From NCBI RefSeq assembly GCF_006345805.1, contig NC_043019.1:4091360-4155359 (forward strand): a DNA stretch of 64,000 nt. Direction: 5' to 3'. Under the pieces are notes generated by a model. That model saw only the letters and a list, made by a program, of their open reading frames with translations, made no database searches and was not told the DNA's origin. The stretch comes from Octopus sinensis. Its lineage: Eukaryota. Made by a program: the position numbers and the translations under genes. Positions 32,682-56,300 of the stretch are shown piece by piece. Within the stretch, counting starts at the first letter, position 1; each line of letters opens with the position of its first letter.

Positions 32682-32999
32682 TTATTCTACAATCTTTAAT
32701 CGTTGTTGAATATCGATTTCATATAAATTAGATCGCCGTCCGCAAAGTTTATGAATATAATTCTCTTGAGAGCAATTAAAATAAAGCATGAAACTTTTGC
32801 AATGATGACAAAGAACAGGGATTGAGTCCATGAGTCCAGCCCGTTCTTCCTTTTGGTTGAGTTTATCTACCAGGAGTATTTTCAAGGACTGGTACTTGCC
32901 AATAGCATTGGAATATCGTAGCTTCTGTTTCTCATTTACACTTCGTTTATGTAGTTGTCTTATTTCGTTCAAAAGATTCTCCAAATGAAACAGCTGGTT
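32682..32999 (-). CDS. STAND-TPR gene A, distal alternative terminal exon (10b)
   Basis: TTTCTAG|AAC acceptor, phase 0, 105 codons plus TAA; NQLFHLENLL...LCHHCKSFMLYFNCSQENYIHKLC...LKIVE*. Confidence 0.82.
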   Translation of the reverse strand, partial: NQLFHLENLLNEIRQLHKRSVNEKQKLRYSNAIGKYQSLKILLVDKLNQKEERAGLMDSIPVLCHHCKSFMLYFNCSQENYIHKLCGRRSNLYEIDIQQRLKIVE

Positions 33000-33236
33000 C
33001 TAGAAATAAAAAGAAAGTGAAATTAAACAATATATATATATATATATATATATATATATATATATATATTATCTTCATCATCATCATTTAACGTCCGTTT
33101 CCCATGCTGGCATGGGTTGGACGGTTTGACTGAGGACTGGCAACCCTGTAGGATGCACCTGGCTCCAATCTGATCTGGTAAAGTTTCTACAGCAGGATGA
33201 CATTCCTAATGCTAACCACTCTGAGAGTGTAATTCT

Positions 33237-33557
33237 TTATTCTACAATCTTTAATCGTTGTTGAATGTCGATTTCATATAAATTAGATCGCAGTCCGCAA
33301 AGTTTATGAATATAATTCTCTTGAGAACAATTCAAATACTGCCTGAAGGTCTTGCAATGATTACAAAGAACAGGGATTGAGTCTATGAGGAGTCCAGCCC
33401 GTTCTTCATTTTGGTTGAGTTTATCTACCAGGAGTATTTTCAAGGAGTGGTACTTAGCAATAGCATCGGCATATCGTTGCTTCTGTTTCTCATTTACTTT
33501 TTGTTTCAATAGTTGTCTTAGATGGTTCAAAATATTCTTCATATGAATCAGCTGGTT
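33237..33557 (-). CDS. STAND-TPR gene A, proximal terminal exon (10a)
   Basis: TTTCTAG|AAC acceptor, phase 0, 106 codons plus TAA; NQLIHMKNIL...LCNHCKTFRQYLNCSQENYIHKLC...LKIVE*. Confidence 0.85.
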   Translation of the reverse strand, partial: NQLIHMKNILNHLRQLLKQKVNEKQKQRYADAIAKYHSLKILLVDKLNQNEERAGLLIDSIPVLCNHCKTFRQYLNCSQENYIHKLCGLRSNLYEIDIQQRLKIVE

Positions 33558-33904
33558 CTAGAAATAAAAATGAAGTGAAATTAAGCCACATATGTATATA
33601 TATATATGAGGATAATATCGATCCCATCAAGTGGCCAACATGGGAATAAATGCCATAGAAAGGTAAAAATTATTTAAAACTATAAATTAGGGTATCTGAG
33701 AGATGGCACCATGCTGAAATAGCAGTCCAAACCGTGGCTCAAAAGCCACAGCGCTAGGAGAGAAGACAGAGAGACAAAATTATCTAGAAAAAAAAGATTT
33801 TTCTGGATAATTGAAGATCCTGGATTTCTGACTTTGCATGAGAAGCTCTGCCTTCTTCAGTTGAATATACCAGATCGGCAAATAAATACATACATATATA
33901 CTCT

Positions 33905-34318
33905 TTACTCTTTCACTCTTTTACTTGTTTCAGTCATTTGACTGCGGCCATGCTGGAGCACCGCCTTTAGTCGAGCAAATCTACCCCGGGACTTATTCTT
34001 TGTAAGCCCAGTACTTATTCTATCGGTCTCTTTTGCCGAACCGCTAAGTGACGGGGACGTAAACACACCAGCATCGGTTGTCAAACAATGCTAGGGGGAC
34101 AAACACAGACACACAAACATATACATACACACTTATATATATATACATATATACGACAGGCTTCTTTCAGTTTCCGTCTACCAAATCCACTCACAAGGCA
34201 TTGGTCGGCCCGGGACTATAGCAAAAGACACTTGCCTAAGATGCCACGCAGTGGGACTGAATCTGGAACTATGTGGTTGGTTAGCAAGCTACTTACCACA
34301 CAGCCACTCCTGCGCCTA
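33905..34318 (-). mobile_element. SINE family C, full length
   Basis: Reverse complement of the 14038 type. Confidence 0.88.
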
Positions 34319-34603
34319 TATATATATATATATATATATATATATATATATATATATATATATATATATATATATATATTATATATATATATATATATAT
34401 TTATAAATTTATAAGATTAGCTCGTATACGAGTGGGTATATATTTGTTAAAAATATATGCATTCTGGCCACCTAAAAGGTTATATAAAACCCAAACAATT
34501 CACAAGGTCCGCCAGAACTGTCCGAGCGGACACCGACCAAAAGTCATCACAGTTGCTCAAGGTAAAATATAAAATGAATTCCTCGCTTTTTCAAGAACGT
34601 CAA

Positions 34604-35034
34604 TTTTTTATATTGAATGCATATCACCACTATGAACTATTTTTTATATTGAATGCATATCACCACTATGAACTATTTTTTATATTGAATGCATATCACC
34701 ACTATGAACTATTTTTTATATTGAATGCATATCACCACTATGAACTATTTTTTATATTGAATGCATATCACCACTATGAACTATTTTTTATATTGAATGC
34801 ATATCACCACTATGAACTATTTTTTATATTGAATGCATATCACCACTATGAACTATTTTTATATTGAATGCATATCACCACTATGAACTATTTTTTATAT
34901 TGAATGCATATCACCACTATGAACTATTTTTTATATTGAATGCATATCACCACTATGAACTATTTTTTATATTGAATGCATATCACCACTATGAACTATT
35001 TTTTATATTGAATGCATATCACCACTATGAACTA
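34604..35034. repeat. 36-bp tandem array, 12 copies
   Basis: TTTTTTATATTGAATGCATATCACCACTATGAACTA x12, identical except one unit with 5 T. Confidence 0.97.
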
Positions 35035-53350: not shown

Positions 53351-53366
53351 AATAAATTTAATAATA

Positions 53367-53700
53367 TTACATCTCATCCAAACTGACCCTCTCCCTAATT
53401 AGTTGGGCTATGATCTTCTCCGTGACCTTCATTACCTGATCCAACAGCTTGATACCTCTGTAATTATTTGTATCTAAGGCGTCACCTATACCTTTGTAGC
53501 AGTTGACTATTATGCTGCTACACCAGTCATTCGATATGACTCCTTCGTGTATCACCTGGTTATCTATACGGGTGACCAGGCTAGATCCGACACTGCCAGA
53601 TATTTTGAGCATCTCTGCAGTGATTCCCGATGAGCCGGGGGCTTTCCCTGTCTTCATACTTTTAATAGCTTTATCTACTGTCAACTCGGATAGCTGCTTT
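53367..53700 (-). mobile_element. RTE-clade LINE RT N-terminal fragment
   Basis: AIKSMKTGKAPG..GITAEMLK...W..SII..YKG.GD...NNYRGIKLL. Confidence 0.9.
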
Positions 53701-53913
53701 ATCTATTATTAAGATTTGTATTTAAAAATTATTGAAATAATTTGTGTATTTTCGAAGTATAAACAATTTCTTACTGATATATTTTAACAACAGCAAACTC
53801 GTGTATGGACCTCTATGGGCCATATGGTCCTCAACTGAAAACCAATGGACGATATAACACAGGTTCAACAAAAATGTGACACATGAAAGACTGACTTGGA
53901 AAAAATATCTTAC

Positions 53914-54939
53914 CTCATAATAAACTCCATATGTCCTACCATCTGAGGGTGCTTCAATCCCTTTCTTCAAGATAAATGAAATATTTTCCCAGTTATTCTT
54001 CATTATTCCAAGTGCTTCATATATGAGGCCTTTATCATAAATATCTTGAGCCTTCATCAAACTTTTCCCGATAATGTTTGTATATTTGAGCTTTACCAAA
54101 TCATTGCTGTGTACATTGTCAATCTGTTGCATAGAAAGTACACGTACTAATTCTTGTACTTGGAAATTCTGTAATTCTAAATCTGAACTGATCAAACCTT
54201 GTTCAACAAGCGGCATCAGAACACGTATCATTGAAGCTGGTTGACTAGAAGAACCAGTCATTTCAACAGCTTCCTCAATACCAAATCTTCCAGGAAAATA
54301 TGAAAGCACTTTGATAGCATCTTGCTGTTCGTGAGAGAGTTGAGAAAAGTACTTGTCCATTTCTTGCTTAATATTACGTCTGTTAATTGTACATTCGTCC
54401 AGCCAGTCATTGAGCTTGGTTTCATCACAAATCATTTTGTAGATATCATTAAAAGAGAAATTATGATGAAACTGGGAGATTTTTTCTGCAAAGTAAATAA
54501 GAAGTCCTGGCAAGCCACAGGCATATCTGATGATGTTGTGTATTTGTTCTTTGTTCTCATCATCCGTCTCAATGTCTGAACAGCGACCGAAAAGAAGCTG
54601 GGCATCTCCAATGGACAATGGACTCACTTTACACTTTCCAAACCTGATTCCATCAAACTGAAATGGTTCTCCACCACTTAATATGAGAATGATTTTTAGA
54701 TTTGGGTGCAGTGGAAAGTCATTGTCGCAAAGCTCCTGGAAACCTGGAAGGAAGCTTTCTTGAATGTTCTGGAAATCATCAAAAATACAAATTTTCCATT
54801 TCGTGTTGGTGATAGTGGAACAATTGGTGAATGTATTGTACATGTTGGAAATATCAGACCAACTGCTATTATTAGAAATATGGATGTGTTTTATGTGGAG
54901 TCTTTCGGGGTTGATTTCATCCTTCAATTCTTGACAGAC
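53914..54939 (-). CDS. STAND-TPR gene A, exon 2 (Walker B, GLP motif, winged helix)
   Basis: 1026 bp, phase 0-0; VCQELKDE...ICIFDDFQN...ACGLPGLL...FQVQELVR...GVYYE|gtaag. Confidence 0.93.
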
Positions 54940-56120
54940 CTGTCATATTAGAAACATAACATTAGAACAAGTTCAAAGGTTTCCATAGATTCACTTATCA
55001 ATTTATTGGTCTCTCAGTTTTTCTCTTTCTCTGTCTGACTTTATAATTCTCTCTCAATAACTGTCTCTTTGTCTATTCTTTTGTCTATGCATTAGTTCAG
55101 GGTATCCTTTATATTCCTTCATATTCATCTTACAGTTTGCCTAAGTATCTTTCTGGATAACAGTTTGTCACTTTGCCATTCTATCTCTTAATTATCTTTC
55201 TGTTAATTACACAGATGCTTTATCTCTTTTACTATCCATCTCTTATTTCGTCTACCTCTCTGACTCTCTGTCAGTCAATTAATTATTCTTGTGCTTGAGA
55301 GATCTTTCAAGTCAAGTGAGGTCGTAGTCATGGCTGATGCTGGGGTTTCGTAACTGGCACGTAAAAAACACCCCTTACACTCTTGCAGTGGTTGGTGTTA
55401 GGAGGGGCATCCATCTGTAGAAACCATGTCAAATTAGATTGGAACCTGGTGCAGCTCCCCAGCTTACCAGTTTTCAGCCAAACTGGCAGACCCTCTACAG
55501 CCTTCGGAAACCAAACTTACTTGTTTCCAAGGAAATATTTCTCTATAGGAAATTTCCATGTAATATTGGAAGTTAATGACATTCATTTACAAGAAATCTA
55601 CAATGTCAAGCCGAGGAGATGCAAACATACACACGCTCACAGTTGCATACGTACAGACACACACACACAAACACACATATACACACCTGCCTTCCTACCT
55701 ACCTACCTACCTACCTACCTACCTACCTACCTACATACCTACCTACCTACTTACCTACCTACCTACCTACCTACCTACCTACCCACCCACTCACTTACAT
55801 ACATAATATATAAAGCAGTCAAACCTCTCCCAAACTGTCCACCTTCTTCATGACATAGAACAGGAGACATTAATAATATAATCTTTGCCATAGACAGAAT
55901 GGTTACAGGAGAAATACCTTTGATCATAGGTCAACCACCAACTCACCAAACGGTACAAAGACTTCAGTGACTGCCATTGTATGGGATTGAACCAGAAATG
56001 CTTTTGTCTTTAGTCAGTAACTTAACTGTAAAACCTCAATGATCCCTAATAACCTACAGAAACGCAAAATGCAATAAGGTTAACGTAAAAAAAGAGAGAA
56101 AACAATAGTAAATTTCTTAC

Positions 56121-56300
56121 AGTTTTCACAAGACTTGTTTTGCCAACATAAGGCAGTCCATAAACTTGTATTATTTGAGTATCTTCATCCTTGATCAAGA
56201 TCTTCAGTTTTTCCCTCTCATCATGTCGTCCAACAAAGTGTCTGCCATTATTGCCTTGCTGTCTCATGTAATTGGGGGGTAATCGATATGGTGTTGCCAT
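56121..56300 (-). CDS. STAND-TPR gene A, first coding exon (Walker A)
   Basis: FVGRHDERE...GLPYVGKTSLVKT|gtaag; in-frame TAA four codons upstream of the ATG. Confidence 0.9.

What the first reader, a model, noticed from the sequence alone, without database searches (positions are those of the whole stretch)
32682..56300. Hidden 10-exon NLR-like gene: STAND NTPase, winged helix, TPR array and Cys/His tail (~858 aa)
Seen: exons 56300-56121, 54939-53914, 51027-50871, 48938-48791, 46941-46832, 45308-45195, 42807-42664, 42199-42088, 40337-40073 and 33557-33237 all have GT-AG ends and chain with matching phases into one 2577-nt frame. Most are missing or mis-framed in the ORF track. Motifs include FVGR, Walker A GLPYVGKT, Walker B ICIFDD and CGLPG, then about 7-9 TPR-like repeats. 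Known: NB-ARC/NACHT plus superstructure-forming repeats is the NLR immune-receptor layout, and NB-ARC-TPR forms occur in fungi, bacteria, brown algae and some invertebrates. Inference: this is a candidate intracellular immune sensor of a cephalopod; whether the family has been described cannot be checked here.
Basis: partly seen in the sequence, partly recalled or inferred. Interest (0 to 1): 0.85.

Follow-up and report, generated by a model that had tools for sequence, protein, structure and literature searches.

The report
Octopus STAND ATPase–TPR gene, already annotated
The ten predicted exons are real and match an uncharacterised Octopus sinensis RefSeq gene (LOC115223560) exactly. It encodes a divergent Apaf-1/plant-NLR-type switch ATPase fused to TPR repeats, one of a cephalopod-specific tandem gene cluster, and an immune role is plausible but untested.

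Summary
Observation confirmed. The ten minus-strand exons have GT-AG ends, matching phases and one 2577-nt frame. The 858-aa product is identical to RefSeq XP_029650057.1, LOC115223560 isoform X1 of Octopus sinensis. The window is 100% identical to CM016881.1:4.12-4.15 Mb. The gene is therefore uncharacterised, not hidden.

The architecture call holds:
- Walker A and B, a GLPG helical domain and a winged helix. The AlphaFold N-terminal model (pLDDT 83) best matches CED-4, ZAR1, NRC4 and Apaf-1.
- About 8-9 TPR pairs, with Pfam TPR_12 above threshold.
- A 106-aa tail in which only a CxxC is conserved.

Limits on the NLR label:
- Pfam NB-ARC is sub-threshold (18.4 against 23.5 bits).
- There is no NACHT, LRR, CARD or other N-terminal effector domain.
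- The sensor-1 Arg and the MHD His are replaced across the cephalopod clade.

It is a divergent NB-ARC-like STAND-TPR protein, not a strict NLR. Octopus sinensis has about 11 annotated loci, several of them partial. Orthologs occur in O. bimaculoides, Argonauta and cuttlefish, and distant relatives in bivalves, a hemichordate and cnidarians.

Extras: a second alternative terminal exon (32682-32999, used by isoform X2) and a truncated second copy (17574-22177). Immune function remains inference. This is a new member of a known kind, of moderate-to-low interest.

The parts
56121..56300 (-). Exon 1: start codon, about 21-aa leader with no effector domain, FVGR motif, Walker A GLPYVGKT (aa 48-55)
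   Evidence: G48, P50, G53, K54 and T55 are invariant, including in distant relatives.
53914..54939 (-). Exon 2 (342 aa): Walker B ICIFDD, sensor-1 position (LSGG, no Arg), HD1 with CGLPG, winged helix with FPGRFGIEEA and FQVQEL (Gln in place of the MHD His), then the start of the helical linker
50871..51027 (-). Exon 3: helical linker and first TPR-like pair
48791..48938 (-). Exon 4: TPR
46832..46941 (-). Exon 5: TPR
45195..45308 (-). Exon 6: TPR
42664..42807 (-). Exon 7: TPR
42088..42199 (-). Exon 8: TPR
40073..40337 (-). Exon 9: TPR (best TPR_12 stretch, aa 652-720) and the last helices of the array
33237..33557 (-). Exon 10a: terminal exon of isoform X1 (106 aa). Two long helices, then the conserved CxxC (C817, C820), then the stop codon
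32682..32999 (-). Exon 10b: tandem duplicate of the terminal exon with its own AG acceptor and stop. It encodes the tail of RefSeq isoform X2 (100% match) and is 78% identical in aa to 10a
17574..22177 (-). Truncated second copy of the gene, downstream on the same strand: exon 1 at 21998-22177, exon 2 at 19550-20575, exon 3 at 17574-17729. Exon 3 has a 1-nt deletion in a T run. No exons 4-10 follow before the assembly gap at 16265-16364

Best explanation
Window 32682-56300 (minus strand) is the protein-coding gene LOC115223560 of Octopus sinensis. It encodes an 858-aa cytosolic protein, or 857 aa when the alternative terminal exon is used.

The protein has four parts:
- a divergent NB-ARC-like (Apaf-1/CED-4/plant-NLR type) STAND nucleotide-binding oligomerisation module, made of a P-loop domain, a helical domain and a winged helix;
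- a helical linker;
- about 8-9 TPR pairs;
- a 106-aa helical tail carrying a conserved CxxC.

There is no N-terminal effector domain. The gene belongs to a cephalopod-specific family that is tandemly duplicated on one chromosome.

Inferred mechanism, by analogy with characterised STAND proteins:
1. The TPR array holds the module closed.
2. Binding of a ligand, most likely a protein or peptide, releases it.
3. Nucleotide exchange at the intact Walker A/B site lets the module oligomerise.
4. Because no effector domain precedes the NOD, output must come either from the C-terminal tail, which exists in two alternative versions, or from partner proteins recruited to the oligomer.

The most likely biological role is intracellular sensing in innate immunity or cell death.

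Shown: the gene structure, the identity with the RefSeq model, the domain architecture, the family distribution and the motif substitutions.

Inferred: the switch mechanism and oligomerisation, the ligand type, and the immune role. I put about 0.9 on the architecture and about 0.35-0.4 on the immune role.
For: Gene model:
- Exact GT-AG chain.
- Identical to XP_029650057.1.
- Same span as the RefSeq gene.
- Junctions are ungapped against an intron-less transcript contig of the cuttlefish ortholog.

NOD module:
- An HMM built from cephalopod sequences only reaches 81 of 180 distant proteins at E<=1e-3, scaled to 1.84 billion sequences, across profile positions about 15-400.
- Several of those relatives pass the Pfam NB-ARC cut-off: Potamilus 32.3 bits, P0170 31.4 bits, Glandiceps 26.1 bits.
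- Of the 40 best hits of the exhaustive search, 35 carry TPR_12, 18 NACHT and 14 NB-ARC.
- The AlphaFold N-terminal model, built on the 93%-identical partial paralog P0018 (LOC115226970), not on this gene's product, has pLDDT 83 and pTM 0.78 and shows a wing hairpin.
- Its best PDB matches are CED-4 (TM 0.53-0.55, rmsd about 5 A), the ZAR1 resistosome, NRC4, Apaf-1 and Sr35. No NACHT protein appears in the top 50.
- The full-length model's top hit is 6mfv, an archaeal STAND-TPR protein.

TPR array: TPR_12 scores 54.8 bits against a cut-off of 30.1. Kinesin light chain TPR domains match at 1e-7.

Family:
- O. sinensis paralogs are 84-88% identical.
- O. bimaculoides 69%, Argonauta 53-59%, cuttlefish 39%.
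- The neighbouring paralog lies 35-80 kb away on the same chromosome.

Selection: NOD omega 0.38 (0.22-0.64), so the gene is under purifying selection. TPR omega is 0.68-0.77.

Context from the literature: NACHT/NB-ARC-TPR proteins are a known invertebrate class (PMC7642931, PMC6321704, PMC9646362, PMC2246300).
Against: - Pfam NB-ARC is below its cut-off for this protein (18.4 against 23.5 bits). So are all other P-loop families that matched.
- The sensor-1 Arg (TTR/TSR in relatives) is LSGG here. The MHD-equivalent His is Gln in all cephalopod members. The nucleotide cycle may therefore be atypical or degenerate.
- No effector domain is recognisable, and the tail has no homolog outside cephalopods.
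- No expression, induction or ligand evidence was reachable, and no paper mentions these loci.
- TPR omega is not above 1 and its interval overlaps that of the NOD.
- In the deep comparison with cuttlefish, the TPR region is more conserved (46%) than the NOD (35%). That is not the pattern of a hypervariable sensor.
- One placozoan genome paper regards TPR/WD40-type NOD proteins as probably not involved in PAMP recognition (PMC6321704).
Confidence: 0.6

Rival explanations
1. It is a non-immune STAND/TPR scaffold or regulator, for example of trafficking, cilia, the cell cycle or transcription. In this reading the NOD is a nucleotide-gated assembly platform, and the tandem copies reflect ordinary segmental duplication, not an arms race.
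For: - There is no death-fold, TIR or other immune effector domain.
- The TPR region is better conserved than the NOD between octopus and cuttlefish.
- TPR omega is below 1.
- The best TPR matches are adaptor proteins: kinesin light chain, LGN, APC/C subunits and APPBP2.
- STAND proteins such as MalT, AfsR and NPHP3 have non-immune roles (established knowledge; AfsR match).
Against: - The family is restricted to cephalopods and is multi-copy, with partial and duplicated units. This is typical of fast-turnover sensor families and unusual for core scaffolds.
- It is not an NPHP3 ortholog.
- Among recent paralogs, dN in the TPR region is about three times that in the NOD.
Confidence: 0.3
2. It is a degenerate switch: a pseudo-NTPase that binds nucleotide but no longer cycles. 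It would act as a constitutive adaptor, decoy or helper for other STAND proteins, not as an autonomous sensor.
For: - The sensor-1 Arg and the MHD His are replaced throughout the cephalopod clade. The related 1195-aa protein P0063 has even lost the first Walker B Asp.
- The AlphaFold model superposes far better on open, active oligomer states (ZAR1 resistosome, active apoptosome, CED-4; rmsd 5-9 A) than on closed ADP-bound Apaf-1 (rmsd 23 A).
Against: - Walker A GKT and Walker B DD are invariant in the family, which argues for retained nucleotide chemistry.
- Gln can still hydrogen-bond a phosphate.
- The conformation of a predicted model is weak evidence.
- The motif assignments rest on one multiple alignment at about 20% identity.
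Confidence: 0.15
3. The N-terminal domain is a classical AAA+ module of the clamp-loader or initiator type (RFC, ORC/Cdc6), not a STAND module.
For: - In the profile search of PDB sequences, the best hits are RFC small subunits (3e-6) over residues 28-132.
- ORC, Cdc6 and RuvB appear in the fold search.
Against: - The RFC match covers only the Walker A-to-B segment.
- ORC/Cdc6 TM-scores are 0.30-0.37, against 0.48-0.55 for CED-4, ZAR1 and Apaf-1.
- The HD1 GLPG and WHD FPGRFG motifs and the C-terminal TPR array are STAND features.
- AfsR and plant NLRs match residues 168-329.
- The relatives are NB-ARC or NACHT proteins.
Confidence: 0.03
4. The locus is a decaying or non-functional duplicate whose open frame is fortuitous.
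For: - The neighbourhood contains a truncated, frameshifted copy and retroelement insertions.
- Several family models in RefSeq are partial.
Against: - An 858-codon frame runs across 10 exons with canonical splice sites.
- NOD omega is 0.38.
- Full-length orthologs exist down to cuttlefish, with transcript contigs in many sequencing runs.
Confidence: 0.03

Closest known systems
Invertebrate NB-ARC/NACHT-TPR 'NLR-like' proteins (Hydra, Acropora, placozoans, amphioxus, bivalves)
   Same: - Same order of parts: STAND NOD, then TPR_12/TPR_10-type repeats.
- Shared motifs: FVGR, GxPGxGKT, hhhhD[DN], G[LV]P[LG] and FPGxF.
- Detected reciprocally by profile search.
- Lineage-specific expansions are typical of this class (PMC7642931, PMC9646362).
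   Different: - Many of those proteins carry N-terminal Death, CARD, DED, TIR or HEPN domains. This one has none.
- The cephalopod clade replaces the sensor-1 Arg and the MHD-type His and adds a private C-terminal CxxC tail.
- It is too divergent to pass any Pfam NOD model.
Apaf-1 / CED-4 / plant CNL resistosome NB-ARC module (AP-ATPase clade of STAND)
   Same: These are the best structural matches of the N-terminal 454 residues: NBD, HD1 and WHD with a wing hairpin, at TM 0.48-0.55. Walker A/B and the GLPL-like motif are shared.
   Different: - No CARD or coiled-coil effector, and no WD40 or LRR. It has TPR instead.
- Sequence identity is 12-17%.
- MHD is QEL, and the sensor-1 Arg is absent.
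- Apaf-1 itself is reported lost in molluscs (PMC11463336). This protein has no CARD, so it is not a replacement ortholog.
Archaeal and bacterial STAND-TPR proteins (PDB 6mfv; MalT, AfsR, Avs-type)
   Same: - The full-length fold search puts 6mfv first (E 7e-8 over 771 columns).
- AfsR matches HD1-WHD by sequence profile.
- UniProt names the O. bimaculoides homologs 'MalT-like TPR region domain-containing protein'.
   Different: - There is no DNA-binding or nuclease effector domain.
- TM is low (0.28-0.35) because the domain orientations differ.
- Pfam TPR_MalT is not matched by this protein.
Nephrocystin-3 (NPHP3)
   Same: A P-loop NTPase followed by TPR_12-type repeats. RefSeq auto-names a bivalve relative 'nephrocystin-3-like'.
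   Different: - NPHP3_N scores 11.8 bits against a cut-off of 24.8, and TPR_NPHP3 gives no hit.
- There is no N-terminal coiled-coil or TTL region, and the protein is 858 aa long.
- It belongs to a multi-copy cephalopod-specific cluster and is not a single-copy ortholog.

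Membership tests
STAND NTPases (Leipe et al. 2004) | P-loop NTPase core with Walker A (GxxxxGK[ST]) and Walker B (hhhhD[DE]) | tested here: met
   GLPYVGKT at 48-55 and ICIFDD at 110-115. G48, G53, K54, T55, D114 and D115 are invariant. The models show a five-strand alpha/beta core.
STAND NTPases (Leipe et al. 2004) | Helical domain with a GxP motif, followed by a winged-helix domain | tested here: met
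   CGLPG at 202-206 (L203, P204 and G205 invariant). The model has helices at 250-306 plus a beta hairpin at 310-321. The fold matches CED-4, ZAR1 and Apaf-1 NBD-HD1-WHD. The 454-residue model and the fold search used the 93%-identical paralog P0018, not this gene's product.
STAND NTPases (Leipe et al. 2004) | C-terminal superstructure-forming repeat sensor | tested here: met
   TPR_12 scores 54.8 bits against a cut-off of 30.1. There are about 20 helices between 340 and 746 at pLDDT mostly 80-95.
STAND NTPases (Leipe et al. 2004) | Nucleotide-dependent oligomerisation switch | not testable with these tools
   Requires biochemistry or cryo-EM.
NB-ARC domain (Pfam PF00931; AP-ATPase clade) | Score at or above the Pfam gathering threshold | tested here: not met
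   18.4 bits against 23.5, over residues 33-100 only. Relatives reached with a cephalopod-only profile do pass (32.3, 31.4 and 26.1 bits).
NB-ARC domain (Pfam PF00931; AP-ATPase clade) | Sensor-1 Arg (RNBS-B 'TTR') and MHD-type His at the end of the WHD | tested here: not met
   By alignment, ILILSGGEP stands in place of L[IF]T[ST]R, and FQVQELVR in place of F.[VI]H[SG]L. Gln322 is invariant in cephalopods. The alignment is at about 20% identity, so confidence is moderate.
NB-ARC domain (Pfam PF00931; AP-ATPase clade) | Closest structural class | tested here: met
   The top PDB matches are CED-4, ZAR1, NRC4, Apaf-1, Sr35 and a wheat NB-ARC resistosome. No NACHT protein is in the top 50.
Bona fide animal NLR (NACHT + LRR; Ting et al. 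2008, as used in PMC3879445) | NACHT domain | tested here: not met
   PF05729 gives no hit at E<=1.
Bona fide animal NLR (NACHT + LRR; Ting et al. 2008, as used in PMC3879445) | C-terminal leucine-rich repeats and an N-terminal death-fold or other effector domain | tested here: not met
   There is no LRR, CARD, PYD, DED, Death or TIR hit. Only about 21 residues precede the NOD.
Nephrocystin-3 orthologs | NPHP3_N and TPR_NPHP3 domains, in a single-copy conserved gene | tested here: not met
   NPHP3_N scores 11.8 bits against 24.8, and TPR_NPHP3 gives no hit. O. sinensis has about 11 family loci.
Apaf-1 / CED-4 orthologs | N-terminal CARD (and WD40 repeats in Apaf-1) | tested here: not met
   Neither domain is detected. 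Apaf-1 is reported absent from molluscs (PMC11463336).

The most novel reading that the evidence does not exclude
The cephalopod family may be an effector-less NB-ARC-like sensor system diversified by modular exon and cassette duplication with alternative splicing. In this reading, one conserved NOD (exons 1-3) is joined to alternative sensor or output modules.

Observations that fit:
- This gene has two tandem alternative terminal exons, both used in RefSeq isoforms.
- The neighbouring gene LOC118767588 has one set of exons 1-3 followed by two complete cassettes of exons 4-10, and its gene range ends at the stop codon of the second cassette.
- A lone exon 1-3 unit lies downstream of this gene.

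If real, a small gene cluster would make a combinatorial receptor repertoire post-transcriptionally. That has not been described for NLR-like proteins. The clade-wide loss of the sensor-1 Arg and MHD His would mark a changed activation mechanism.
Probability: 0.12. Interest if true: 0.7.

Novelty: new member of a known kind. Interest (0 to 1): 0.3.

Why it matters
Cephalopod innate immunity is poorly mapped. Surveys that count NLR-like genes by Pfam NACHT or NB-ARC hits would miss this family, because no NOD model reaches its threshold.

The analysis shows that octopods and cuttlefish carry a private, tandemly duplicated family of divergent NB-ARC-like STAND-TPR proteins with no effector domain. 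That gives a concrete set of candidate intracellular sensors to test in haemocytes. It is also a natural example of an NB-ARC-type switch lacking the sensor-1 Arg and the MHD His. Molluscs are reported to have lost Apaf-1, so any NB-ARC-type oligomeriser in this phylum is worth checking for a link to cell death.

The gene model itself is already public and the architecture class is well known. The gain is annotation and hypothesis, not discovery of a new kind of system.

Tried and rejected
- Single-sequence Pfam scan. Only TPR_12 passes. All P-loop families are sub-threshold, so Pfam alone cannot name the NOD.
- Single-sequence PDB search. It finds only kinesin light chain TPR domains.
- Profile search of PDB sequences with the N-terminal alignment. 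The best hits are RFC small subunits over the Walker A-to-B stretch. I rejected this as a generic P-loop similarity, because the fold search and the HD1-WHD region point to NB-ARC proteins.
I used isoform X2 (P0001) and the 454-aa partial paralog P0018 instead.
- Exact-protein look-up of isoform X2 found no contig. Isoform X1 is found only in the genome record, so no octopus transcript contig was obtained and direct RNA-seq junction support is still missing.
- Literature search for the LOC identifiers gave no papers. A search for octopus haemocyte transcriptomes mentioning TPR gave nothing relevant.
- Profile search with the tail (exon 10) against all fetched proteins. There is no significant homolog outside cephalopods, only a similar CxxC in two bivalve relatives.
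- Rfam scan of the window gave no hit.
- NPHP3 orthology, AAA+ identity and pseudogene status were considered and rejected (see Rival explanations).
- The multi-frame long ORFs elsewhere in the window are microsatellites, not genes.

Full report
**1. The observation**

Each internal exon is flanked by AG and GT. The phases chain (0,0,0,1,2,1,1,1,2,0) into 2577 nt, giving 858 codons and a single terminal TAA.

This is far more than chance, and it has independent confirmation:
- The 858-aa translation is present letter for letter in the public protein collection as XP_029650057.1, 'uncharacterized protein LOC115223560 isoform X1 [Octopus sinensis]'.
- The gene call in assembly GCA_006345805.1 lies at CM016881.1:4123041-4148659 (reversed). 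It spans 23,619 bp, which is window 56300-32682.
- The window is 100% identical to that record over the 25.6 kb fetched.

The gene is uncharacterised but not hidden.

Direct transcript evidence for the octopus gene could not be reached. Indirect support is good. The cuttlefish-type ortholog P0016 is encoded as one uninterrupted 845-codon ORF on a 2,882-nt Logan contig, and its 90% cluster includes Acanthosepion pharaonis CAE1248458.1. The alignment is ungapped within six residues either side of all nine junctions. The same holds for the two Argonauta proteins.

**2. A second terminal exon**

A tblastn of the product against the window found a second copy of the last exon at 32999-32682. That is 237 bp downstream of the stop codon of exon 10a. 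It has its own polypyrimidine tract, AG acceptor and stop codon.

Its translation is 100% identical to the tail of RefSeq isoform X2 (XP_036368273.1, 857 aa). Exons 10a and 10b are 78% identical at the protein level, with dN 0.114, dS 0.109 and omega about 1.0. This explains why the finding's lower coordinate is 32682.

**3. What the protein is**

*Single-sequence searches are weak for the N-terminus.* In Pfam only TPR_12 passes its cut-off (54.8 against 30.1 bits). The P-loop families all stay below threshold on residues 22-120:
- ATPase_2: 23.8 bits
- AAA_14: 22.0 bits
- AAA_16: 21.5 bits
- NB-ARC: 18.4 bits (cut-off 23.5)
- nSTAND6: 14.7 bits
- NPHP3_N: 11.8 bits (cut-off 24.8)

There is no NACHT, LRR, CARD, Death or TIR hit. 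By sequence, PDB gives only kinesin light chain TPR domains at 1e-7.

*Profiles resolve it.* The exhaustive search with an N-terminal alignment found 20,015 proteins at E<=1e-3. Matches run over profile positions about 18-335, which is the whole nucleotide-binding oligomerisation module. Of the 40 best non-cephalopod hits, 35 carry TPR_12, 18 NACHT and 14 NB-ARC (best 2.7e-23).

That alignment contained one distant sequence, so I repeated the test with an HMM built from cephalopod sequences only. At a database size of 1.84 billion it still hits 81 of 180 distant proteins at E<=1e-3. The nearest named relatives are:
- Argonauta hians GAB1602180.1
- the bivalves Solemya velum, Pecten maximus, Potamilus streckersoni and Mercenaria mercenaria (the last auto-named 'nephrocystin-3-like')
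- the hemichordate Glandiceps talaboti

Three of these relatives pass the NB-ARC threshold themselves.

*Structure prediction agrees.*
- The full-length model of isoform X2 has mean pLDDT 70, with the TPR region mostly 80-95. Its best PDB match is 6mfv, a crystal structure of an archaeal STAND-TPR protein. Pure TPR proteins follow.
It reaches pLDDT 83 and pTM 0.78.
- That model shows a five-stranded alpha/beta core, a helical bundle, and a winged helix with a beta hairpin at 310-321.
- Its best matches are CED-4 (TM 0.53-0.55, rmsd about 5 A over about 390 columns), the ZAR1 resistosome, NRC4, the active Apaf-1 apoptosome, Sr35 and a wheat NB-ARC resistosome.
- ORC/Cdc6 and RuvB follow with lower TM (0.30-0.37). 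No NACHT protein is in the top 50.

The N-terminal half is therefore an NB-ARC-like (AP-ATPase clade) STAND module.

**4. Motifs**

Conserved and present:
- Walker A (G48, P50, G53, K54, T55) and Walker B (D114, D115) are invariant.
- The HD1 motif CGLPG (L203, P204, G205) is invariant.
- The WHD motif FPGRFGIEEA (F275, G277, F279, G280, A284) is conserved, and is shared even with cnidarian-type relatives.

Replaced in the cephalopod clade, according to a MAFFT alignment with relatives:
- Where cnidarian-type relatives have L[IF]T[ST]R (the sensor-1 Arg), cephalopods have ILILSGG or VISGW.
- Where relatives have F.[VI]H[SG]L (the MHD-type His at the end of the WHD), all cephalopod members have FQVQEL or FRIQRI, with Gln322 invariant.

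This rests on one alignment at about 20% identity, so I hold it with moderate confidence. If it is right, the nucleotide switch is atypical.

Across the family only C817 and C820 (a CxxC) are invariant, and the other Cys and His residues vary. The tail has no detectable homolog outside cephalopods. Two bivalve relatives have a similar CxxC just after their TPR arrays.

**5. Family and neighbourhood**

Names returned for O. sinensis are LOC115223560, 118767588, 115223561, 115223562, 115227430, 115223564, 115223652, 115223655, 115223659, and the partial 115226970 and 118760987. LOC115223562 and LOC115227430 appear in the searches only as labels on Argonauta hians and O. vulgaris records. Most lie on the same 32.9-Mb chromosome record.

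Orthologs and paralogs occur in O. vulgaris, O. bimaculoides (69%), Argonauta hians (59% and 53%) and cuttlefish (39%). LOC118767588 lies at CM016881.1:4.04-4.09 Mb, 35-80 kb from this gene.

Selection, using Nei-Gojobori estimates against that paralog:

| Region | omega | 95% interval |
|---|---|---|
| NOD exons | 0.38 | 0.22-0.64 |
| TPR exons | 0.68-0.77 | 0.44-1.33 |
| Tail | 0.6-1.0 | — |

The gene is under purifying selection, and its repeat and tail parts evolve about three times faster at non-synonymous sites. There is no significant omega above 1. At depth (octopus against cuttlefish) the TPR region is more conserved (46%) than the NOD (35%). The evolutionary pattern is compatible with a sensor family but does not demonstrate one.

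**6. How it most likely works**

This is inferred from characterised STAND proteins such as Apaf-1, CED-4, ZAR1 and MalT:
1. The TPR array keeps the NOD closed.
2. A ligand, probably a protein or peptide since that is what TPR grooves usually bind, relieves the block.
3. Nucleotide exchange at the intact P-loop allows oligomerisation through NBD-HD1-WHD.

No effector domain precedes the NOD. Output must therefore come from the C-terminal tail, which exists in two alternative versions, or from recruited partners.

I put about 0.9 on the architecture, about 0.6 on the switch and oligomerisation mechanism, and about 0.35-0.4 on an innate immune or cell-death role.

Rivals are a non-immune scaffold or regulator (0.3), a degenerate non-cycling adaptor (0.15), a classical AAA+ module (0.03) and a dead gene (0.03).

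**7. Comparison with what is known**

NACHT/NB-ARC-TPR proteins are a recognised invertebrate class:
- Hydra and Acropora (PMC7642931)
- placozoans (PMC6321704)
- amphioxus and sea urchin Apaf-1-like proteins in which TPR replaces WD40 (PMC2246300)
- pearl oyster NACHT-TPR proteins (PMC9646362)

Under the strict NACHT-plus-LRR definition (PMC3879445) this protein is not an NLR. It is not an Apaf-1 ortholog either, because it has no CARD. Apaf-1 is reported as lost in molluscs (PMC11463336). It is not NPHP3. No paper in the library mentions these loci.

Verdict: a new, divergent, cephalopod-specific member of a known kind. The gene model was already public, and function is untested.

**8. Side observations**

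- *Truncated second copy.* Downstream on the same strand lies a truncated second copy: exon 1 at 21998-22177, exon 2 at 19550-20575 and exon 3 at 17574-17729. Exon 3 carries a 1-nt deletion in a T run. Exons 4-10 are absent before the assembly gap at 16265-16364. It matches no listed protein exactly.
- *Duplicated TPR cassettes next door.* The neighbouring locus has one set of exons 1-3 followed by two tandem cassettes of exons 4-10. Its gene range ends at the stop codon of the second cassette. Taken with exons 10a and 10b, this suggests either modular alternative splicing or segmental or haplotig duplication. Iso-Seq and read depth would decide.
- *Retroelement and repeats.* A Ty3/gypsy-type retroelement (protease-RT-RNase H and integrase ORFs, plus a DUF7041 ORF) occupies 3520-7536. 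The long multi-frame ORFs elsewhere are microsatellites.

Noticed in passing
window 17574-22177 (-), with the N gap at 16265-16364: A second, truncated copy of the gene with exons 1-3 only, 92-95% identical in aa over exons 1-2. Exon 3 has a 1-nt deletion in a TTT run. No exons 4-10 follow before the assembly gap. It is either a pseudogene or 5' fragment, or a homopolymer or assembly error. It matches no listed protein exactly.
   Followed up: partly
window 32682-32999 (-): A tandem duplicate of the terminal exon, 237 bp downstream of the stop codon of exon 10a. RefSeq isoform X2 uses it (100% match). It is 78% identical in aa to exon 10a, with omega about 1. These are alternative C-terminal tails.
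   Followed up: yes
L001 (CM016881.1:4042748-4088902), locus coordinates 2001-44155: The neighbouring paralog LOC118767588 has one set of exons 1-3 followed by two tandem cassettes of exons 4-10 (12136-24310 and 33641-44152). The gene range ends at the stop codon of cassette 2. This could be alternative use of whole TPR cassettes or a haplotig or segmental duplication. A 601-aa family member is also called on the opposite strand across the whole locus.
   Followed up: partly
window 3520-7536 (+): A Ty3/gypsy-type LTR retroelement. One ORF carries aspartyl protease, RT and RNase H; the next carries the integrase zinc-binding and core domains; a DUF7041 ORF lies upstream. One O. vulgaris gene model (P0006) fuses 98 aa matching window 5525-5818, inside this element's RT-RNase H ORF (64% identity), to a family member. 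That is probably an annotation chimera.
   Followed up: partly
window 9067-9416, 11280-11721, 21315-21663, 27426-28517, 29497-30337: Long microsatellites (AC, TAA, CCTA, TTTC, TGTA). They account for the long ORFs that are open in several frames in the mechanical ORF list.
   Followed up: yes
window 34603-35034 and 37561-38370 (intron 9): Intron 9 is very AT-rich (GC 22-28% over 34-40 kb). It holds a 36-bp array of 12 copies at 99% identity and a 78-bp (225-bp) minisatellite.
   Followed up: no
window 10679-11225, 42215-42480 (intron 7), 44563-44929 (intron 6): A repeated unit of about 180 bp (…GGGGCTAAACACAGAGGGGACAAACAAGGACAGACAAA…) in short tandem arrays. It is probably a dispersed SINE-like or satellite element of the octopus genome.
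   Followed up: no
protein residues 148-150 and 319-326 (exon 2, window about 54680 and 54160): The whole cephalopod clade lacks the sensor-1 Arg (LSGG) and has Gln in place of the MHD-type His (FQVQEL). The related 1195-aa protein P0063 also has K in place of the first Walker B Asp.
   Followed up: partly
C-termini of P0085 (Solemya velum) and P0117 (Pecten maximus): Both bivalve relatives carry a CxxC-x2-YR-like motif just after their TPR arrays, resembling the octopus LCNHCKTFRQY. This may be a conserved short metal-binding or interaction motif.
   Followed up: no
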